From NCBI GenBank assembly GCA_000388065.2, contig KB932209.1: DNA of 63,994 nucleotides; one strand, 5' to 3'. This document shows positions 11,008 to 21,400 of this stretch, one piece after another; position 1 is the stretch's first letter, and each line of letters starts with the position of its first letter. Source of the stretch: Fonticula alba ATCC 38817. Its lineage: Eukaryota; Protista; Nucleariida. The notes beneath the pieces were generated by a model. It searched no databases and was not told where the DNA came from. It saw only the letters and a program-made list of their open reading frames with translations. The translations under genes were made by a program, and so were the position numbers.

Positions 11008-13862
11008 CGGAGTAAAGGACGAGGGGAGCATTTGGTGCCTGGTTGGGGGGCGGGGAGGGGGGAACGAGAAGGAGATCAAGCACCAGGAGACAAGGGGGCT
11101 GGCGGATGGCAAGGGGGGCCGGAGACGGAAGGGGAGGGGGAGAGAAAAAAGGGGGGAGGGGTTGAGGAAGAGGATGCCCAAACTGAAAACCGGCTTGTTT
11201 GTGGGCGCCCGGAAAATGTGCCCCTCAGGCGGGGGGGGGGGGGGCACCCTCGCTCGCACGCACGCCCCGAACACCGGCACAGGGAAACACATTCGAAAGT
11301 CGCCAGGCTCGCGTAATATCAGCTGNNNNNNNNNNNNNNNNNNNNNNNNNNNNNNNNNNNNNNNNNNNNNNNNNNNNNNNNNNNNNNNNNNNNNNNNNNN
11401 NNNNNNNNNNNNNNNNNNNNNNNNNNNNNNNNNNNNNNNNNNNNNNNNNNNNNNNNNNNNNNNNNNNNNNNNNNNNNNNNNNNNNNNNNNNNNNNNNNNN
11501 NNNNNNNNNNNNNNNNNNNNNNNNNNNNNNNNNNNNNNNNNNNNNNNNNNNNNNNNNNNNNNNNNGGGAGGGAGGCGAGGACTACGTCATGAAATTCACA
11601 TTTTCTGCCAAGAAATGATGGCCGCATGGGGGAATGCCTTCGCCGGGTCCAGCTGTGGTAAGTAGAGGATCGAACGCCGATATACCCTCCTCTTCGGCGG
11701 GGGGAATGCTTTTTCATTTCATTGGGAAGGGGAGGGATCCGCCCGCCCCAGCCAGGAGGGAGAGATGATGTCAGTGGTTGTATTCGGGAGCTTGCATTTT
11801 CATTTTGCCAGTGCTCCCAGGAGAAATCGAGCACACCTGGTGGGAGAGCTTGACCTTGAGCGCGCCAGTTCGGGAGCCGGTCATGGGCCGCATGTGTGGG
11901 CAAGGGACCCCGGGAGGAGTGCCATGCACTCGCTGGCCAAGAAGACCTCCTGCCACAATATCGCACGGGGGCGGGGAATGATTGCACTTGCCACCGGCAC
12001 ACCGGCCGGGCTACTTGTGTCGGTATTGTTCCCCCCATCGCTCCCCAACAGGGCCCTGTGACCTTCTCTCTTCCTCACAGCCCCCACGAGGGGCGTTTAT
12101 TTGTTCTCGCTCTGGGAGAGGACCTTAGGCGGTCCGGGGGAGGGCAGGATGGTCCTCGAACTTTGTCCGAATATCATTATTCTTGCCGTCGTGCATGGGA
12201 CCCGGGTGGGGGGGAACGCCTTCCCGCCCATGGTGCACCGCAGGAAGAATCCCGGGGGGGGGGGGATCGAAAAATGGACATTGGTCGTGAAGTGCCCCCG
12301 AGATCCGCATACCGAAGCCAGGGCACTGGGCATGATGCCGGCTTCACCCAGCTCGAGGATCCGCGCCCCGCCATGCTGCCTGGATAAAATGTGAAAATTA
12401 TAGCCCGAATAAGCATCTGGGCTATTGCCTTTCGGTGCCGGCCTTGCGGCAGCATGGTGCGGCGACCGCGAGAGCTCCTCCCCACCCCCGCGGTGCTGGT
12501 GGTCCGGGAGGCCGCGAGTGTTTATTGATCATTTTTTCCCCCAACACGGCAGGCAATCCTCTCGGGACCTTTTACCTGCCGGTTGCCCGAGCCGCATTGG
12601 TCCTGTGCGAGCGGAACCGAGCACATGAAGAAGCACCAGCAATGCCTGAGGTGCTCCTGGCCATGGTGAAAGGAGTGTCCCGGACCGCGACATACCACAG
12701 ATCGGGGCTGGGGGCGATGGGTGTTGAATGGGCCCCCTTGGCTGCGAACTCGACGATCGGGGGAACCCGGCTGCCAGAAGAGGCCATGGAAGTTCCGGAA
12801 TGGGGCAAGACAATCCGACGGCTCGTGGGTGCCTTGCGTGTCTCACACCGTCCTTCGGGGTCACCGGCCGGCCCGCTGCCCTGGGCGGCTCTATACGGGA
12901 ATGGCTAGACCTTAGCCATCCACCCACCCCCAGGGACAAGGAGAGAGGCACAGGCGGCCATCCCCTGCGGGGAGGCCCGACAACGTTCCAACCAATTGAC
13001 CAACATTCGCTCGATCGTGGACCATAGCTGGGGGGNNNNNNNNNNNNNNNNNNNNNNNNNNNNNNNNNNNNNNNNNNNNNNNNNNNNNNNNNNNNNNNNN
13101 NNNNNNNNNNNNNNNNNNNNNNNNNNNNNNNNNNNNNNNNNNNNNNNNNNNNNNNNNNNNNNNNNNNNNNNNNNNNNNNNNNNNNNNNNNNNNNNNNNNN
13201 NNNNNNNNNNNNNNNNNNNNNNNNNNNNNNNNNNNNNNNNTGCTCCTGCGGCGCCGTCCGAGCCCGCGGTGCGCGGGATCCGGTGATCGCTGGTCTGCGC
13301 TATAAGGGCCGGTGATATCAACCACCGAGAGATTGGAGCCTTCCATCCCAGTTTTCCCCCTCACCAACCCCGCCTCTTTTCCCTCTACCTCCCGTGCGAT
13401 CGCCCCCATCCCTTCGCCCGAGGTTCCTTGTTGGTTGACGCCGGCGTCAGCACTTTGGTTGGAAAACCCCCCACTCGATACACACGCGCACCCACAGACC
13501 GCTGCCTCAGCACCAGGTACTTTGACGCCCATGCACTCATCCGTCCAGACGCAACACACACGCACCCAGACACATACACATACACACCCACACACAGCCA
13601 TGCATGAAGATGCACCCCTGTTGGGAAGACCATTGCCACGAAGCAGCAACCCCTGGGCGCATGCCGAGCATCGGTGCTTCGTGGCATGCACACCGTGACC
13701 AGCCTGCCAGCATGGGCGCCGGCAGGGGAGGGGGGGGGGGGCAAGAAACATCCTCTCTGGCTCTTGCCGCCGCCCTCTAATCACCGCGGACATCAATCTA
13801 ACACTCCTCGCCCGGCTGCTGTGCTTTCCCCGGACGGTGGTTGGTAGTGCGTGACCGCCACC

Positions 13863-14945
13863 ATGAATGACTCCCTGAACGAGGACCCCTCCATGCAGGC
13901 GACCTATGCTGAGGGGTTCCCCATGGCCAAGTCCATGCCGTCCCCTCCGCAAACCAGCCGGCCGCTGGTGGTGGAGCCGGTCGAGGCCGTCCGTACCACG
14001 GTCACTCGCACCACCACCGTCACGCCGGTCCAGCAGGAGATCGTCGAGCCCCGAGGGCCGGTCATCTACCAGCCGCCCAATCCGCCGGTGGTGCCGGACG
14101 GCGAGGCGCGCCGGTTCAGCGTCGTGTCGCCCTACTCCAAGTATCGCGATCCGCAGCAAATCCGCCGGCTACGGTGGATCTACATCATTGCCGGCCTGCT
14201 GATGCTGGCCCAGATGATTGTCCTGGTGGCCATTGCGGGCAGTCTCAACCAGCCGAAGTACCGGATTTACACCATGTTTGCCGGGTATGCTCGTGGTGAT
14301 CGGCGCTTCCGCTACATCAACCTCCATCCGCGCGGGTTCATGACCGTCGCGCCGTATGTGTCCATCTTCATGGGGATCATCGGCGCCTGCTACCTGCTGG
14401 GTGGAATCTTCGCCGGCAAGATGCAGTCCTCCATTGCCCGGCGCGGCATCAACTACTGGCACTGGTTTGGCATGCTCCTGTCCTTCACTTGGCTCAGCTT
14501 CATTGTGGCCTGGGCCGTCGGTGTGTCGGACATGTTCCTGCTGATGAACATTGCCTTCCTGACTTTCGGCATGGTGGGCCTGTGGCTCATGCAGCATGTG
14601 GTCAATCCGCCGGTCGACGGGACGCGCAACTTCTGGGGCCATATCATGGGCTGGATTCCCTTCCTCATGATCAGCACCACCCTCATGGCTTTCCTTTGGA
14701 ACCGGGAGAATCGCTCGGCCAATGCCCTGATCTATGTGGCGGTCTTCCTGACCGTGGTCCTGTACCTGCTGATCGGCCTGGTTCAGATGTTCCACTTCAT
14801 CAAGCACCGCCGGTATGAGGCCAGCTACACCACCGACAAGATCTACCTCTTCCTGAACTTCATCTTCCTCAGTGCCATCGGCTGGGTGATCTTCGCCTGC
14901 TTCACCGGCAAGTTCAACGACTTCGACACGGACGATCCCAAGTAA
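13863..14945 (+). CDS. Heliorhodopsin-family 7-TM protein lacking the retinal-binding lysine, 360 aa, intronless
   Basis: ATG in GCCACCATG context and strong C/G-ending codon bias. Seven hydrophobic segments align by eye to heliorhodopsin motifs: IAGLLMLAQM, VSIFMGII, INYWHWFGMLLS, GVSDMFLL, FWGHIMGWIPF, IGLVQMFHF and DKIYLFLNFIFLSAIGWVIF (HeR consensus ERAYIVLSLVAKSALAWQIF). Confidence 0.85.
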   Translation: MNDSLNEDPSMQATYAEGFPMAKSMPSPPQTSRPLVVEPVEAVRTTVTRTTTVTPVQQEIVEPRGPVIYQPPNPPVVPDGEARRFSVVSPYSKYRDPQQIRRLRWIYIIAGLLMLAQMIVLVAIAGSLNQPKYRIYTMFAGYARGDRRFRYINLHPRGFMTVAPYVSIFMGIIGACYLLGGIFAGKMQSSIARRGINYWHWFGMLLSFTWLSFIVAWAVGVSDMFLLMNIAFLTFGMVGLWLMQHVVNPPVDGTRNFWGHIMGWIPFLMISTTLMAFLWNRENRSANALIYVAVFLTVVLYLLIGLVQMFHFIKHRRYEASYTTDKIYLFLNFIFLSAIGWVIFACFTGKFNDFDTDDPK

Positions 14946-16538
14946 AGGTGTCACTTGGGCGGAGGGGGGAGGGGGCGGGGAACTCGGGTGCGCTATGCCC
15001 CCATGCCTGCCGCCCTCCTCGCATCCGTGTCCCTTTGTGCGTCCCGGGGGAGACCCCGAAGAAGGGGGACCGGGAATGGCGGAGAGTCGTGTCGGGGTGT
15101 GGCACGAAGGATGAGCCTCGGCAGGAGGGGGAGGGATCCCACAAAGGGGAGGGCGACGTCGGTGGAAGCACGAAGTTGAATCTGTGCCTCACGCTCGCCC
15201 GCCTCGGTTCCCAGTGCCCACCCGACCCTTCGGGCCTGCTGTCTAATGCAATGTACGTGTGTGTTGGTGTGTGTGGGGGGTGCCTTTCCGAAAGTAGAGC
15301 CCACATGCCATGATGTGACCCCCTTCGGGGAGTCGATTGGGGGATTGGGCGGCAGGCCGGGCCAGGGGGTGTGGATGGGCCTGGGCGGTGCGTCGCATTG
15401 TTGTTCAGACCCACGGGGCGCACAGGAGAGGGACTTGGTCCGCGTAATCAAGATCCCCTTTTTGCATGTGCCCTCGCCTGCGCACGCACACACGCCGGCC
15501 GAAACACCTCCTCCGGGCTTGCCCTTCTTCCCGTGGCCTCAGTGAAAGGAAGTTCCCGAGCAGTACCCATCGACAAACACACGCACACACACACACACAC
15601 ACACACATGGATAACAGGCGAACTTGGCACACATCGAGCATGAAACCACACAACAGATGTGCGCGTACATGAACCCGAACCCTGCTTCTCGTGTCCCCCC
15701 CACCCCCCCCACACCCCCACCCTCCTTCGCCTCTCCCCCTCTGTCTCTCCCTTTCCCCACGTTCACGCCGGAAGTGTGCCTCACCGGGAAACGGGGAGAG
15801 CGCAATGTGCGCACCCACACATCACCATAATACACGCCACTATGTCCATATGCATGCCGCTTGCCGGCAACAAAACACCGGCGCACGTAGCTTGTGCATC
15901 GGGAGAACCGGGGGGGAGGGGAGCGCCTTCTGTGCGACGAAGAGAAGGACACACGCGCGCGGGGGCAGGAAAACAAAGCAACCCCCACAGAGGAGAGCGG
16001 GTCGTGGGAGGGGGGGAGAAAAGAGGGGAGGGGAAGAGGAAAGAAAACAACAACAACAACAACAACAACAACAAGAGGGGGGATTTGGTTTTTCCATATA
16101 ACAACCGGGGAGAGAGATGTGTATATGCGCATGTGTATACAGCAAGAGAATGGCCGACATAGAAGGGGGGGGGAGGGGGAATTTGAGAAGAACTGGGGAG
16201 CCCCTTATATGCCGGGCGCGCCCCTTTTGCCAGGTGGTACACACACACGGAGGAGCCAGGCGCAGGGACACAGGGAAGGAGAAGGACCGAGGGAGAGAGA
16301 GAGAGAGAGAGAAGGAGGCGGCGTGCACGAGAGCACAGCAGGCGCAACACGCCGATCCGTCGCCACGGCACCCTCTCCTCCTGCCCCTCCGTTGGCCTAA
16401 CTCCCCTCCTCCGGGACATCATCACGCCCGGGGGAAGGGCGGACGAGGACGAAGGGAAAGGGGAGGAGGGGGGGGGGGAGGTGCTCACACACGCGCACAC
16501 ACACGCTAAGCCGGATGTGCTCGAAGAAACAGGCTCCC

Positions 16539-17930
16539 TTAGTTGCCGCCCTCCAGGGTGGTGATCTTCTGCTCGAGGACACGGATCTGGATGTCCTTCT
16601 GGGTGAGCTTGTTCTGGAGGTCGGTGACCTCGGCCTTGAGCTTGGCCCAGGCCTCGCGGTACTCCTTCTCGTTCTTGGGGGTGTCATCCTTGACCTCCTC
16701 AGTGAGGACGGACTTGAAGGAGACATCCTTGCGAGCGCCGGGGACGAAGCCGTTCTCGAGGCTGATCTTCTTGGGGCCATCGACGGACTTGCCGCCGAAG
16801 AACTCGGCGCAGGACATGGGGGCCTCGCCGGAGGTGGCCTCGGGGAAGAGGTCATCCTGGAAGAGCTCCGACTTGCGGGGGACCTTGAAGGAGATGGGCT
16901 CAATGAAGGAGGTGGTCAGGCGGTAGGCACGGCCGATCTCAACCTCGTTGACGTTGACGGCGCGCTTGGGGACGAAAGCCACACCACGAGACGGGTCGGA
17001 GCCGGAGTAGTTGGAGATGTGGTGGATGTGGGGCTTCTCGTCGGTGACCTCGAAGTAGCGGATGGTGGTGTCACCCTTGCCGGCCAGGTAGAGGATGTGG
17101 CAGTCCTCATCGTAGAAGGGCATCAGCATACCGGCGGAGGTGTCCAGGTTGTCGGAGTAGATGGGGTTGTCCAGGTCGTTGACATCACGGATGGCCATCT
17201 GGCGATCGGAGGCACGGGAGAAACCGGTGGTGGCGATCTTGTTGGAGTCGCCGAGCCACAGGCAGCGGGAGCCCTTGACACCCTGGTGGGACTCGGTCTG
17301 CTGGACGAGCTTGCCGGAGCGGACATCGAAGATGCGGAGCTGCTTGTCACGGCAGCTGGTGACCATGAGGTTACCGTTGTAGTTGAAGTCAATGGAGTTG
17401 ATCAGATCGGTGTGGTGGGCCTCAATGTCGACCTTGGCCACGCCAGCCTCAATGTCCCACAGCTTGATGACAAGGTCACCGCCGACGGTGGCGAGGGTGT
17501 TGTCGGCGGTGGGGTGGAAGAGGACGGCACCGACACGGCGCTTGTGGCCGGCGAGGGTGGACAGGGGGGTGTCCTGGCTCTCCTTGAGCTCCTCGGGGAT
17601 CTGCCAGATCTTGACGGTGCAGTCCTCGGAGGCGGAGGCAATCAGGTAGTCGTTGAAGGGGTGGAAGTCCAGGTCCAGGACGGCGGCCTTGTGGCCGGTG
17701 AACAGAGGGGGGGTGGGAGAAACCTTGCCGACATCCTTGGTCTGGTCGAAGACGGCGAAGGCACCACCACCACCGGCCTCCCAGCAGACACCGAGGTACT
17801 GGGAGTTGGCCTTGATCAGGTTGGTGTCATGGGCAGTGCGAGAGGGGCGAACACCATCGAAGCACAGGTCCTTCTTGGCAGCGGTGCCGAAGACGTGGCG
17901 GAACTTGGAGTTGCGGACAAAACGGGACAT
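16539..17930 (-). CDS. CORO1: Coronin (WD40 actin-binding protein), 463 aa, intronless
   Basis: Starts MSRFVRNSKFRHVFGTAAKK. Coronin WD40 motifs (GHKAAVLDLDFHPFNDYLIASASEDCTVKIW, PFYDED, KGDTTIRYFE, VPRKSELFQDDLFP) and a C-terminal coiled coil. Highly biased codon usage. Confidence 0.98.
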   Translation of the reverse strand: MSRFVRNSKFRHVFGTAAKKDLCFDGVRPSRTAHDTNLIKANSQYLGVCWEAGGGGAFAVFDQTKDVGKVSPTPPLFTGHKAAVLDLDFHPFNDYLIASASEDCTVKIWQIPEELKESQDTPLSTLAGHKRRVGAVLFHPTADNTLATVGGDLVIKLWDIEAGVAKVDIEAHHTDLINSIDFNYNGNLMVTSCRDKQLRIFDVRSGKLVQQTESHQGVKGSRCLWLGDSNKIATTGFSRASDRQMAIRDVNDLDNPIYSDNLDTSAGMLMPFYDEDCHILYLAGKGDTTIRYFEVTDEKPHIHHISNYSGSDPSRGVAFVPKRAVNVNEVEIGRAYRLTTSFIEPISFKVPRKSELFQDDLFPEATSGEAPMSCAEFFGGKSVDGPKKISLENGFVPGARKDVSFKSVLTEEVKDDTPKNEKEYREAWAKLKAEVTDLQNKLTQKDIQIRVLEQKITTLEGGN

Positions 17931-18250
17931 GACTGAGGCCGGGCGGGGGGGGGGAAGGGGGAAGGGGGTGAGTAGGCGGGTCGCGGGGAGGCGGGGCGAG
18001 GGGGGGAGGAACGAAAGAAGGAGGGGGAGGGGAAGGAGGTGATGACGGTGGCAATTACAGTGCCAGCAATCATCAAGAAGAGCCTCGGAGAGACCGAGAC
18101 AGAGAGAGAGAGAGAGTGCCACTGCATTGAGGCTCGTGCTGATGACACCGGCGGTGCCACCAACGCGAGCAAACGTCGGCGGGGCCGAGACGACACGCAA
18201 GCGCGTGTGTGTGGACACGGCAAGCAAAAGGGCAAGCACACCAAAAAAAA

Positions 18251-18437
18251 GAGGGAGGAAGAGGAGAGAGGGAGGAAGAGGAGAGAGGGAGGAAGAGGAG
18301 AGAGGGAGGAAGAGGAGAGAGGGAGGAAGAGGAGAGAGNNNNNNNNNNAGAGGGAGGAAGAGGAGAGAGGGAGGAAGAGGAGAGAGGGAGGAAGAGGAGA
18401 GAGGGAGGAAGAGGAGAGAGGGAGGAAGAGGAGAGAG
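18251..18437. repeat. 17-bp polypurine minisatellite (GAGGGAGGAAGAGGAGA)n, about 10-11 copies, upstream of coronin
   Basis: Direct sequence; contains a 10-N gap at 18339-18348. Confidence 0.9.
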
Positions 18438-21400
18438 AGGCGAACCTGCGGAGAAAGGAGTTAGAGACAAGAAGGTCCAAACACCAAAAACACACAAATC
18501 GGTTGCCCCCGACTGGTTGGGTACCCGCGCGAGACGCCCCCATAAAAATGTCTCCCCCGCGCCCCCCCCCCCCCCCCCCCCTACCCACCACACACGCACA
18601 CACAAACGCTATACCTATACGGCCGCAGACCCTCCTTCCTTCCCGCACACGCCCTGTCCGATGGTGCGGGAAGGCGCCTGGGCGGGGAGGGCCCCAGGTT
18701 GTGAAGGGCGGCGCGTTGCTCCTTCTGCTGGCCTCCCCGGCCGACGTGCGGCGCCCCCGGCGCCTTCCACTCCCGTCCCTGTCCCCGTCCCGGACCCGGC
18801 TCCCCCCACACCAGCCCGAGAAACCCCCCGGTGGCCGTCGGGCGGACACGAAGCTCCCTCCCACTCCGGCGTTTATATATGCACCCTGTCCCGGCCGGTG
18901 CCCGCACCGGGGAATCACCAGCAAGACATGACACAGAGGCCTCGCCCCTGGGTGGGAAGGGGAACCGGGAAACCGCCGAGACGAGAGGGCAGGCGAAAGA
19001 GAGAGAGAGAGAGAGAGAGAGGGGGAAGCAGAAAGACACGGAGAGGTCAGAAGGCTGCGGCCTCGCCACCGCCCCCGACCGGGGGTGCTCTGGCGACGAG
19101 CTAGCCTCTACCCCCTTCCCCTGCTATTACTGGCCAGGCACGTTCCTCCCCGCCCCCGGCTCGGGGGCGCTAATTTGAAAATTAGCTTTTCAAAAAAAAA
19201 TAACTCCGACCAGGAATGCCCCGCCCCGCCGCCGTAGCCCCCACCGGAGCCCCGCCCTCCGCGTCCCGGAGACACTTGACCGCGGGCTTGCGCGGGTGCT
19301 TTGGCCCACCGGTCCCCGGGGGGGGGCAGGCAGCACGCGCCTCGACATGCCCGAGAAGAAGACGCCCGGCTCCCCCTCGGGCCCGGCTCTTGGCACACCG
19401 AGGACCGGCCGGGCGAGAGGCGGCTACCGGGGGCCACCGGGAGCGCCCTGAAGGGCCGGCCCGGCCTCGAGCGCCTGGGCGGAAGGGGCCGGCGCACGGC
19501 GACCTCAAATCATCGCCACAGGGCCCACACAGGGGGGAGGGGGCCTGGAAGGAGACGCCTGGGCAACGAGGGGCCAACGCCAGCGGCCGCTGTCCAGGCC
19601 CTGTGGCGCGAAGGCTCGACCGACCATTGTTCCCCCTCTCCGGCTCCCGGGCGCCGTGGCCGGGGCTCCTCACACAACCCGGTGAGAGGGGAGACAAGAG
19701 CAAGGAGAGCCGGTGCCAGAAACACGGCGCTGGAATTCGGCCAGCCTGCACTATTCTCGACCCCTGCTGGCCGACGATGCCCAAAAACGACCCTGGCAGA
19801 GAGGGCCTCCTCTCTGTCTGTCTCTCTCTCTCTCTCTGCCCCCCAGGGGGGGACGACATCGGGGGAGACCTCGGGCCGTTGGCCAGGCTCGGCGGGGTAC
19901 TTGCATTAGCTCCTGTGTGGCTGCGCGTGCCAAGGAAACAAACAAGTCCACTTGACGGTGGCCGCCCCCCCCCCCCGGCTTGTCCGGAAACGCGGCCCGC
20001 CGATCGGGTTAGGCCATCCAGGGGGAGGGGGGCCGAGGGCCGGAAATACAAGCCGCAGCGTCCGCCGCCACATCACAGCGAGATGACGACCACCGGCCGG
20101 CGAAACGAGTCCCGGGAGAGCCGCGCCAGGGGCGGGGGGGGGGCTGGCGGGGGAAACAAAAGCACCCGAACCCCTGGCTGTTCGGGACGCACACGCTCTT
20201 ACGCACACACACACACACACACACACATGCACGCTCGCACCTCCGGCGGGAGAAATACAACCGGCCCTCCAGCGGAAGTGGGCGGGTGGACGCCGGACCC
20301 CGCTGGCGCGCCAATGTGAGGCCACATGCCGACCCCTCCCCCTGGCGGGGAAGGCCGTTTCCAGAGAAACACCCCTCCGTGAGGGCCCACACATACACAC
20401 ACACACGCACCCGGGCACACACAGACAAACACACACACACACACACACAGATACGGAGCACACCCCCCCCCCTTGGAAACGACTAGCAGCGAGAGGTGGG
20501 GAACACCCCCGCCCTTAGGGCGTGCGGCGCGGACGCAGCCCGGCCTGCCGTGGTGGCCGGTGAATGGGATCCCCGAGAATGAAGCGCTCCCGGCTGGACA
20601 TTTGGGGCGTGGTGGGTGCTTTGTGCGACGGTCGGGCGGGGGGACCCAGATGAATGGGGGGAGGGGCGGCTTTCGGCCGGGGGCGTTCGAACGCATGCGT
20701 GCGAGTGTGCCCTCGCGCGCGCGCGCGCGCGCCCACTCGCAACAACAAGCACCCCTGTCGCCTGTGCCCGTGGGAGTAGTCTCTAGACGAGGGCCTTCCC
20801 TGGAGTGTGCGAGGCGCCGAGACTCGGGGGCATCGGCGAGCGCACCTTGCCACCGCCTCGGAGAGGCCGAGCAAATGCCCGGGCAGGCAACGGAAAGCCG
20901 CGCCCGCCAGCAGGCCGGTCACAACCGGCGTCCAGAAGGCGGGACCTCGCCAGTCACTGCGCAAGTTCAACCCCCCCTTGCGCCCGGTCCCCGCGCGCGC
21001 TCGCTCGCTCCCCCCCTCCCCCGTGCCCCTCTCGCCGTCGAGGGGAGAGCCCCCGGGCGATCGGCCCCGCGAGGAGGCAGCCGCGGGCGCCGGCGGCGCC
21101 CCTAAAAAATATGGGTCATACGAGGGGCGCCCCATAGCGCGGATGGCCATTGGTCGGGCGGGAAAATTCCGCCCGGGAACGAGTGCCGAGGGGCGGCGCG
21201 CCGGACACGGGGGCCAGGGCGGGGGGCGGAAGGGGGGGGGGGGCGGGGACCGGAGTGGGGTACCCCGTTCCCCCCTCTGGACTGCCACACCAACATGCCG
21301 CGCTGGTGGCCACTGGCGCGGCCGGCAGCCCCGGACCGGTCCCCGTAAACTCGGCTGAGAGAGCGAAAAAGATGTCTTTTTTATTACGCGCCCAAGTAGG

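What the first reader, a model, noticed from the sequence alone, without database searches (positions are those of the whole stretch)
14190..14900. The heliorhodopsin homolog has dismantled its retinal pocket: Lys to Leu, counterion Glu to Gly
By manual alignment to HeR 48C12 numbering, the Schiff-base Lys241 in SLVAKS is Leu (NFIFLS; codon CTC at 14868-14870) and Ser237 is Asn. The TM3 RWxEY motif reads HWFGM: Arg104 to His, Glu107 to Gly (codon 14469-14471), Tyr108 to Met. His23 is Met and His80 is Tyr. These are multiple coordinated substitutions, several needing more than one base change, while the scaffold motifs and the reading frame are intact. This implies selection for a light-independent function such as a ligand/lipid sensor, enzyme regulator or channel. 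It would parallel the Lys-less type-1 opsin-related proteins of fungi (e.g. yeast Hsp30/Yro2/Mrh1), but in the heliorhodopsin fold. This is one of the two best candidates for an undescribed system here.
Basis: partly seen in the sequence, partly recalled or inferred. Interest (0 to 1): 0.82.

Follow-up and report, generated by a model that had tools for sequence, protein, structure and literature searches.

The report
Retinal-free heliorhodopsin relative in Fonticula
A soil amoeba related to fungi (Fonticula alba) keeps an intact heliorhodopsin-fold membrane protein that has lost the lysine and the charged residues needed to hold the light-absorbing retinal, so it most likely now works without light; its job is still unknown.

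Summary
The ORF 13863-14945 (+) encodes a 360-aa protein. Its residues 103-345 match Pfam Heliorhodopsin (E 2.9e-15), and its alignment-based AlphaFold model superposes on all solved heliorhodopsins (TM 0.75-0.80).

HMMER and MAFFT alignments both give these replacements:
- Lys241 (Schiff base) is Leu336 (CTC, 14868-14870).
- Glu107 (counterion) is Gly203.
- Arg104, Tyr108, His23, His80 and Ser237 are His, Met, Met, Tyr and Asn.

No lysine lies in any membrane core. Soil, sediment and compost metagenome assemblies carry the same CTC codon.

It is not an isolated oddity or a dead gene:
- Two intron-bearing relatives (37-41% identical) also lack the Lys and Glu.
- A sister group holds one Lys/Glu-keeping member and four Lys-less members. 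Their 7TM dN/dS is 0.04-0.23.
- A bacterial subclade lost the Lys separately.

The function is inferred only. The most likely role is a light-independent regulator or scaffold.

Lys-less type-1 opsins are well known. I found no description of Lys-less heliorhodopsins, and three studies filter such sequences out. I therefore class it as a new variant of a known kind, of moderate interest. The scan had already noted this same stretch (s1-065895).

The parts
13863..14945 (+). Complete intron-less CDS of the HeR-like protein (360 aa plus TAA stop); identical to the database protein P0001.
   Evidence: GC by codon position is 0.54/0.41/0.86.
13863..14147 (+). N-terminal tail of about 95 aa. It is Pro/Thr/Val-rich with no Pfam match and no transmembrane segment. 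It ends in KYRDPQQIRRLRW just before TM1 and contains RRFS, a basophilic-kinase-type motif.
   Evidence: Comparable tails with a KY(R/D) motif occur in L010, P0004 and P0005. The kinase-motif reading is inference.
14169..14897 (+). Seven-helix heliorhodopsin-fold domain (aa 103-345).
   Evidence: Pfam PF18761 at E 2.9e-15. AlphaFold2 model with pLDDT 83.9 and pTM 0.83. Foldseek top 10 PDB hits are all HeRs at TM 0.75-0.80. ESM Atlas HeR cluster at TM 0.81, rmsd 2.3 A.
14868..14870 (+). Leu336 codon CTC at the position of the Schiff-base Lys241 of 48C12.
   Evidence: Confirmed unchanged in three environmental assemblies.
14460..14474 (+). TM3 motif H-W-F-G-M in place of R-W-x-E-Y: Arg104 to His200, Glu107 (counterion) to Gly203, Tyr108 to Met204. 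Trp105 is kept.
14856..14858 (+). Asn332 (AAC) at the position of Ser237.
   Evidence: The Lys-keeping relative P0004 also has Asn here, so this change predates or is independent of the Lys loss.
14202..14204 (+). Met114 at the position of His23 (Schiff-base cavity).
14391..14393 (+). Tyr177 at the position of His80 (Schiff-base cavity).
   Evidence: The same His-to-Tyr change is in P0005 and P0013.
14595..14597 (+). His245 at the position of Glu149. Together with His200 (Arg104) and His311 (Gln216, 14793-14795), the conserved Arg104/Glu149/Gln216 polar cluster has become three histidines in this species only.
   Evidence: The cluster is described in PMC7049168. It is not shared by L001 or L010. 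Its significance is unknown.

Best explanation
This is a selectively maintained, chromophore-free descendant of a eukaryotic heliorhodopsin, a 'HeR-noK', in the nucleariid amoeba Fonticula alba.

Shown: it keeps the seven-helix HeR scaffold. It has replaced the Schiff-base lysine, the counterion glutamate and 13 of the 17 polar residues that Kovalev et al. list as conserved across HeRs. It therefore cannot bind retinal covalently and cannot be a visible-light photoreceptor of the HeR type.

Inferred: it works in the dark as a membrane scaffold or regulator of a partner protein. The 7TM body would be the interaction platform and the long, disordered, cytoplasmic N-terminal tail the regulated interaction arm. 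Precedents are canonical HeRs that bind and regulate soluble enzymes (glutamine synthetase, photolyase) and yeast Lys-less opsin-related proteins that regulate the plasma-membrane H+-ATPase.

The light-independent part of the ancestral job would have been kept when light control became useless to a bacterivorous soil and dung amoeba.
For: - Family and fold.
- Loss of the site: Lys241, Glu107, Arg104, Tyr108, His23, His80, Ser76, Asn16, Glu149, Gln216 and Tyr226 are all changed. Scaffold residues L12, Q26, P40, F72, N101, W105, S111, G124, D127, M141, Q213, Y233, S242 and W246 are kept. The list of conserved residues is from PMC7049168.
- No lysine in any TM core.
- The sequence is real. Three environmental assemblies agree, and the only two coding differences (14435, 14684) are synonymous third positions.
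- The loss is old and the gene was kept. L010/L011 and L001 are 37-41% identical to the window protein and 49% to each other. They are intron-bearing and have Phe/Thr and Met/Thr at the Lys and Glu positions.
- Descent from a true HeR. The tree gives (canonical eukaryotic HeR, (clade A, (P0004 with Lys and RWFEY, Lys-less clade B))) at 100/99 support.
- P0004 and Lys-less L007 sit at the same locus, next to Nop58, whose copies are 83% identical.
- Purifying selection on Lys-less forms: 7TM dN/dS is 0.043 for P0005/P0013, 0.086 for P0005/P0015 and 0.23 for P0013/P0015.
- HeR-enzyme regulation and the ORP precedents are cited in PMC10308929 and PMC7714340.
Against: - No function was tested, and no partner is known.
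- Expression of the window's own gene is not shown. One RNA run held no reads of the organism, so it was no test.
- dN/dS in the window's own clade is uninformative: dS is about 1.1 and likely saturated, giving an apparent omega near 0.5.
- No new polar constellation is conserved across the Lys-less clades. The sequence therefore does not point to one mechanism.
- The AB loop, extracellular in HeRs, carries 7 Lys/Arg, so the inverted topology is not secure from charge counts alone.
- Eukaryotic gene neighbours (coronin, Coa1) say nothing about function.
Confidence: 0.6

Rival explanations
1. It is a binder or sensor of a hydrophobic ligand, or a lipid scramblase. The former retinal pocket stays hydrophobic and aromatic and holds a lipid, fatty acid or carotenoid non-covalently. 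Alternatively, the 7TM bundle flips lipids, as opsins do without retinal.
For: Pocket-lining positions remain hydrophobic or aromatic: F169, W201, M204, F208, L211, M237, V238, F267, Y301 and L336. Foldseek also lists a retinal-free proteo-opsin bound to decanoate (8cnk). A dark scramblase activity of a proteorhodopsin is reported in PMC10730872. A carotenoid site is claimed for most HeRs in bioRxiv 10.1101/2025.11.27.691015.
Against: Pocket residues are not conserved among the Lys-less clades, which argues against one specific ligand.
Confidence: 0.2
2. It is a decaying relic: a former heliorhodopsin gene that is no longer useful and happens still to be open in F. alba.
For: Long ORFs arise easily in 65% GC DNA; the antisense strand of this very gene has a 261-aa ORF. 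There is no expression evidence for the window's gene. Apparent omega within clade A is about 0.5. HeR studies treat Lys-less hits as possible pseudogenes.
Against: - Three clade-A genes, diverged to 37-49% identity, all keep full 7TM frames without stops or frameshifts inside exons.
- The 7TM part is conserved while the N-tail is not alignable, so decay is not uniform.
- GC3 is 0.86, a coding signature.
- Both environmental variants are synonymous.
- Lys-less clade-B genes have dN/dS of 0.04-0.23.
Confidence: 0.08
3. It is a constitutive ion or proton channel, or a transporter, derived from a HeR.
For: Some giant-virus HeRs transport protons (cited). In this species three histidines (H200, H245, H311) replace the Arg104/Glu149/Gln216 cluster. 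They could bind protons or a metal, and zinc binding to HeRs is cited in PMC8612252.
Against: The His triad is not shared by L001 or L010. The extracellular half remains hydrophobic, as in non-transporting HeRs. No conserved polar pathway is visible.
Confidence: 0.07
4. It is still a photoreceptor that uses a non-covalent retinal or another chromophore.
For: None is specific. Lys-less type-1 proteins regain pumping when the Lys is restored (cited), which shows that pockets can outlast the lysine.
Against: The Lys, the counterion and both cavity histidines are all gone. No Lys lies in any TM core. The residue at the Lys position varies (L, F, M, H, S) among relatives.
Confidence: 0.04

Closest known systems
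Heliorhodopsins 48C12 and TaHeR (PDB 6su3, 6is6) and eukaryotic HeRs such as Chromera velia Cv06
   Same: Same Pfam family (PF18761) and the same seven-helix fold (TM 0.75-0.80). It shares scaffold residues P40, W105, S111, G124, D127, M141, Q213, Y233, S242 and W246. It descends from Lys-containing eukaryotic HeRs.
   Different: It has no Schiff-base Lys, no Glu107 counterion, and neither His23 nor His80. Arg104, Tyr108, Glu149, Gln216 and Tyr226 are changed. It has an added 95-aa N-terminal tail and a very basic AB loop. It therefore cannot be a retinal pigment.
Fungal opsin-related proteins (yeast Hsp30, Yro2, Mrh1)
   Same: Eukaryotic (Holomycota) rhodopsin-fold membrane proteins that lack the retinal lysine and work without light. 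They are reported as regulators of the H+-ATPase and of pH homeostasis (PMC7714340).
   Different: Those belong to the type-1 (bacteriorhodopsin, PF01036) lineage, with the opposite membrane orientation. There is no detectable sequence relationship beyond the fold, since type-1 structures come only after all HeRs.
Bacterial and archaeal Lys-less rhodopsins (Rh-noK, freshwater FArhodopsins, haloarchaeal opsins without the lysine)
   Same: Natural loss of the Schiff-base lysine with retention of the gene. Regulatory or sensor roles have been proposed (PMC10308929).
   Different: All described cases are type-1. Rh-noK keeps a pocket that works again once the Lys is restored, whereas here the counterion and cavity residues are gone as well.
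Lys-less HeR homologues found here (clade B: P0005, P0013, P0015, L007; bacterial: P0008, P0010, P0028, P0029, P0031)
   Same: HeR family, Lys replaced (H, S, Y, V, C, Q), and most also lack Glu107. P0010 and P0028 share the Ser237-to-Asn and Glu107-to-Gly changes with the window protein.
   Different: They are separate lineages on the tree, so the losses were independent, with a minimum of 4 state changes. The bacterial ones have Lys-rich N-tails and come from a MAG (GCA_030428125.1).

Membership tests
Heliorhodopsin family (Pfam PF18761), membership by descent | Significant match to the family profile over the whole 7TM domain | tested here: met
   E 2.9e-15, 56.7 bits against a gathering score of 26.7, profile positions 1-239 of 242. 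phmmer hits five HeR PDB sequences.
Heliorhodopsin family (Pfam PF18761), membership by descent | Seven-helix fold superposable on solved HeRs, better than on type-1 rhodopsins | tested here: met
   The top 10 Foldseek PDB hits are all HeRs (TM 0.75-0.80). Type-1 structures follow at TM 0.53-0.68. Atlas HeR cluster at TM 0.81.
Heliorhodopsin family (Pfam PF18761), membership by descent | Nests within Lys-containing HeRs on a tree | tested here: met
   IQ-TREE LG+C20 places it at 100/96-100/99 support inside a group with canonical eukaryotic P0006 and Lys-keeping P0004. The program gives a long-branch warning.
Heliorhodopsin as a retinal photoreceptor (functional class) | Schiff-base lysine in TM7 (SxxxK) | tested here: not met
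   Leu336 is at the Lys241 position, the motif reads NFIFL, and no Lys lies in any TM core.
Heliorhodopsin as a retinal photoreceptor (functional class) | TM3 Arg and Glu counterion (RWxEY) | tested here: not met
   The motif is HWFGM.
Heliorhodopsin as a retinal photoreceptor (functional class) | Schiff-base cavity residues His23, His80, Asn16 and Ser76 | tested here: not met
   They are Met, Tyr, Tyr and Ile.
Heliorhodopsin as a retinal photoreceptor (functional class) | Inverted topology (N-terminus in the cytoplasm) | tested here: inconclusive
   The N-flank, BC loop and FG loop are basic and the C-tail is acidic, as expected. However, the AB loop also has 7 Lys/Arg.
Heliorhodopsin as a retinal photoreceptor (functional class) | Binds retinal and shows a photocycle | not testable with these tools
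   This needs expression and spectroscopy.
Lys-less rhodopsin-fold proteins (Rh-noK / opsin-related proteins) | Rhodopsin fold with the retinal lysine replaced, and the gene otherwise intact | tested here: met
Lys-less rhodopsin-fold proteins (Rh-noK / opsin-related proteins) | Belongs to the type-1 (PF01036) lineage, as all described members do | tested here: not met
   The only Pfam hit is PF18761.
Lys-less rhodopsin-fold proteins (Rh-noK / opsin-related proteins) | Maintained by purifying selection or expressed | tested here: inconclusive
   Relatives have dN/dS of 0.04-0.23. In the window's own clade synonymous sites are saturated. Expression of the window's gene is not shown.
Pseudogene | Stops, frameshifts or uniform neutral decay | tested here: not met
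   The frame is intact, GC3 is 0.86, the 7TM part is conserved while the tail is not, and both population variants are synonymous.

The most novel reading that the evidence does not exclude
Heliorhodopsins have a core, light-independent activity, such as binding and regulating a partner protein. That activity survives loss of the chromophore. Lys-less HeRs, lost independently in nucleariid amoebae, a second eukaryotic lineage and a bacterial lineage, would then be a natural 'dark' series that isolates this activity. The Fonticula protein, from a culturable organism, and the orthologous pair at the Nop58 locus (P0004 with Lys, P0005-type without) would let the long-unknown function of HeRs be dissected without light.
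Probability: 0.3. Interest if true: 0.72.

Novelty: new variant of a known kind. Interest (0 to 1): 0.55.

Why it matters
The biological role of heliorhodopsins is still debated; sensor, enzyme regulator, antenna holder and transporter have all been proposed. A chromophore-free descendant that is conserved in a non-photosynthetic amoeba, and that arose repeatedly, suggests that part of the HeR job does not need light.

It also offers comparison pairs for finding that job, namely Lys-keeping and Lys-less orthologues at one locus.

It further shows that the common practice of discarding HeR hits without the TM7 lysine as 'spurious or pseudogenes' removes a real class of proteins under purifying selection.

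For Fonticula itself, the Pfam 'heliorhodopsin' match on this protein should not be read as evidence of light sensing.

Tried and rejected
- Word-indexed protein search with the single protein found only itself. With alignment A2 it added P0015 and P0016. With A1 it was swamped by the Lys-rich tails of a bacterial HeR clade; that still revealed bacterial Lys-less members.
- Single-sequence AlphaFold gave a poor model (pLDDT 55) and was not used.
- The search for related loci failed three times: alignment A2 was too divergent, JGI metagenomes held no relative, and genome contigs held none for P0010.
- RNA evidence: the listed RNA runs carry only a shared species label. The one laid (X8) had zero reads, so it was no test.
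- AlphaFold DB clusters confirmed the fold, but organism names were masked.
- The idea that the window protein shares ancestry with the bacterial Lys-less group (similar NF[IV]xL/VSA and G at Glu107) is rejected by the tree; the changes are convergent.
- The idea of a conserved new metal site is not conserved. Clade B has HxxxH plus two Asp, and Fonticula has three His, but neither pattern holds within its clade.
- Two independent eukaryotic losses are favoured by the ML tree (99/92) and by synteny. The AU test does not reject a single loss (p 0.087).
- Poly(A) tails were sought on L004-L006 and L008 to prove that they are transcripts. None were found.
- Literature searches for Lys-less HeRs, for HeRs in nucleariids or Amoebozoa, and for the SRA run identifiers found nothing relevant.
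- The supplements of the Fonticula paper held no rhodopsin entry.

Full report
WHAT IS THERE

The + strand carries one uninterrupted ORF from ATG 13863 to TAA 14943-14945, encoding 360 aa. GC by codon position is 0.54/0.41/0.86, the coding signature of a GC-rich genome. The product is exactly the database protein P0001. It lies on NCBI assembly GCA_000388065.2, scaffold KB932209.1, at about 931.6-932.7 kb. A preprint identifies that assembly as Fonticula alba, a nucleariid cellular slime mould (bioRxiv 10.1101/2023.12.07.570557).

Residues 103-345 match Pfam Heliorhodopsin PF18761 at E 2.9e-15 and 56.7 bits, against a cut-off of 26.7. The first 95 residues or so are a Pro/Thr/Val-rich tail with no family match.

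CHECK OF THE OBSERVATION

phmmer against all PDB sequences aligns residues 99-345 with residues 8-250 of HeR 48C12 (6su3) and with TaHeR. Counting along that alignment gives:
- K241 is L336 (CTC, 14868-14870) and S237 is N332.
- R104, E107 and Y108 are H200, G203 (GGC, 14469-14471) and M204.
- H23 is M114 and H80 is Y177.

MAFFT alignments with canonical HeRs give the same register. In those columns the 14 canonical sequences read N16, H23, H80, N101, R104, W105, E107, Y108, S111, E149, Q216, Y226, E230, Y233, S237 and K241, as in 48C12.

Kovalev et al. list 17 polar or charged residues as conserved across HeRs (PMC7049168). The Fonticula protein keeps only four of them (S111, N101, W105, Q213) plus one conservative change (E230D). 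It does keep scaffold residues: L12, Q26, P40, F72, G124, D127, M141, Y233, S242 and W246.

Its eight lysines are at positions 23, 93, 132, 186, 314, 326, 350 and 360. All lie in tails or loops or at the cytoplasmic end of TM7. K326 pairs with R231 of 48C12.

IS THE SEQUENCE RIGHT?

Logan contigs from a soil, a sediment and a compost metagenome carry near-identical copies. All three cover 14868-14870 without a difference. The only two coding differences are 14435 T>C (ATT to ATC, Ile) and 14684 C>T (CTC to CTT, Leu), both synonymous. The one RNA run laid held no reads of the organism, so it was no test.

FOLD

A single-sequence AlphaFold run was poor (pLDDT 55). With a 29-row alignment the model reached pLDDT 83.9 and pTM 0.83 and showed seven helices. 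The ten best Foldseek PDB matches are all heliorhodopsins (TM 0.75-0.80). Type-1 rhodopsins follow. The ESM Atlas gives a HeR cluster at TM 0.81 and rmsd 2.3 A.

RELATIVES

An exhaustive phmmer scan of 1.84 billion representative proteins found only 11 hits. Together with two further searches and the contigs behind them, three groups emerge.

Clade A is the window's own group:
- Fonticula has L at the Lys position and G at the Glu107 position.
- L001 is a Logan contig with an intron and has M and T.
- L010/L011 come from a eukaryotic contig of a bioreactor metagenome, have at least four introns, and have F and T.
- Identities are 37-49%.
- The nucleariid preprint cites a 2015 study, spelled 'Cantor', among earlier nucleariid sequencing efforts. 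I suspect this is the bioreactor data set behind L010, which would make L010 a nucleariid too. That link was not checked.

Clade B:
- P0004/P0012 keep the Lys (LNAITKTV) and RWFEY, together with N16, H23, S76 and H80.
- P0005, P0013, P0015 and genomic L007 have H, H, S and H at the Lys position and V, V, L and F at the Glu107 position.
- Both P0004/P0012 and L007 lie head-to-tail with Nop58, and the Nop58 copies are 83% identical. They are therefore the same locus in related organisms.

A bacterial clade with Lys-rich N-tails also appears. One member lies on MAG GCA_030428125.1. It contains many canonical HeRs and a Lys-less subgroup: P0008 (Y), P0010 and P0028 (V), P0029 (C) and P0031 (Q).

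TREE

IQ-TREE (LG+C20) gives (canonical eukaryotic P0006, (clade A, (P0004 with Lys, Lys-less clade B))). Support is 100/99 for A+B and 99/92 for P0004 with clade B. The bacterial Lys-less group is placed separately. The program warns of long branches.

At least four changes of the Lys state are needed on this tree. The AU test does not reject a single loss in eukaryotes (p 0.087). Two eukaryotic losses are therefore favoured by the tree and by synteny, but not proven.

The similarity between the Fonticula TM7 and TM3 motifs and those of P0010/P0028 (Asn at S237, Gly at E107) is convergent.

SELECTION

Among the Lys-less clade-B genes, Nei-Gojobori dN/dS in the 7TM part is:
- 0.043 for P0005/P0013 (dS 1.28);
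- 0.086 for P0005/P0015;
- 0.23 for P0013/P0015.
Their N-tails evolve several times faster than the 7TM part.

In clade A, synonymous sites are saturated (pS about 0.58), so the apparent omega of about 0.5 says little. However, three genes that already lacked the Lys at their common ancestor have kept full 7TM frames down to 37-49% identity. A dead gene would not do this.

WHAT IT PROBABLY DOES

Shown: this is a HeR-fold protein that cannot form a retinal Schiff base, derives from true HeRs, and has been kept for a long time.

Inferred: it has a light-independent role. I favour a regulator or scaffold role (about 0.4-0.45 within the overall reading) for three reasons:
- Canonical HeRs are reported to bind and regulate glutamine synthetase and photolyase (references in PMC10308929).
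- Yeast Lys-less opsin-related proteins regulate the H+-ATPase (PMC7714340).
- The eukaryotic clade has acquired a long, fast-evolving cytoplasmic tail suited to regulated interactions.

No new polar motif is conserved among the Lys-less clades. The activity is therefore more likely to sit on surfaces and loops than in the old pocket. In the AB loop, the basic 'RRFRY...RG' stretch is shared by Fonticula and L010.

The rivals are a hydrophobic-ligand binder or scramblase, a relic, a channel, and a non-covalent chromophore. Each is listed with its test.

Specific to Fonticula, the Arg104/Glu149/Gln216 cluster has become three histidines. This is unexplained and is not shared by its relatives.

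COMPARISON WITH WHAT IS KNOWN

Lys-less type-1 proteins are well documented. They include fungal ORPs, Rh-noK, freshwater FArhodopsins and haloarchaeal opsins.

For heliorhodopsins I found no description of such proteins. Three studies set the lysine as a criterion:
- One excludes sequences whose Schiff-base lysine is missing through truncation or misprediction (PMC13295031).
- One checks for the SxxxK motif (PMC9166423).
Neither the family survey of Kovalev et al. nor Bulzu et al. mentions Lys-less members.

The library searched is limited to open-access papers and bioRxiv, so a mention elsewhere cannot be excluded.

VERDICT

This is a new variant of a known kind: the first documented case, as far as I could find, of the 'opsin without lysine' phenomenon in the heliorhodopsin lineage, with evidence of repeated loss and purifying selection. 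Interest is moderate at 0.55. The class is expected by analogy and the function is unknown, but it opens a practical route to the unresolved function of HeRs.

The scan had already noted this same stretch as a heliorhodopsin-family gene (s1-065895).

Noticed in passing
L012:6001-6942 (P0010), also P0008, P0028, P0029, P0031: A bacterial HeR clade with Lys/Thr/Ala-rich N-terminal tails contains a Lys-less subgroup, with V, V, C, Y and Q at the Schiff-base position. One member lies on MAG GCA_030428125.1. P0008 has lost only the Lys and the two cavity histidines, which looks like an early stage of the same process.
   Followed up: partly
L002:2125-5191, L009:925-3988, L007:100-2381: A Lys-keeping HeR (P0004/P0012) and a Lys-less HeR (the L007 gene) occupy the same locus, convergent with Nop58, in related unidentified eukaryotes. 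This is a natural with/without-lysine orthologue pair.
   Followed up: partly
window 14460-14462, 14595-14597, 14793-14795: Three histidines (H200, H245, H311) replace the conserved Arg104/Glu149/Gln216 polar cluster. This occurs only in the Fonticula protein. It may be a metal or proton site, but this was not tested.
   Followed up: no
window 14247-14345 (AB loop, aa 129-161): The loop that is extracellular in HeRs carries 7 Lys/Arg and a 'RRFRY...RG' stretch shared with L010. This is unusual under the positive-inside rule and may mean a different loop function or a different membrane.
   Followed up: no
window 16542-18605 (-): The downstream neighbour is a coronin gene (DUF1899 plus WD40 plus WD40_4).
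   Followed up: partly
window 10672-11292 (-): An ORF with a Coa1 (cytochrome oxidase assembly) domain, E 7.9e-06.
   Followed up: no
window 13036-13240 and eleven other N-runs (e.g. 1146-1470, 2670-3365, 11326-11565): Assembly gaps. One lies about 620 bases upstream of the start codon, so the promoter region of this gene is incompletely known.
   Followed up: no
window 14169-14954 (-) and 12912-14159 (-): Long antisense ORFs (261 and 415 aa) overlap the gene and its upstream region. They are typical spurious ORFs of 65% GC DNA and a warning against reading ORF length as evidence of coding here.
   Followed up: yes
runs X29, X31-X33: DNA runs filed in 2025 under a different species label ('organism A') hold 86-89% of the gene's sampled words. 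Either Fonticula DNA is present in those samples or the label is broad. The many RNA runs offered under that label are therefore probably not Fonticula.
   Followed up: partly
window 15584-15607: A (CA)12 microsatellite lies in the 3' intergenic region. GT/CA-rich tracts also flank the gene.
   Followed up: no
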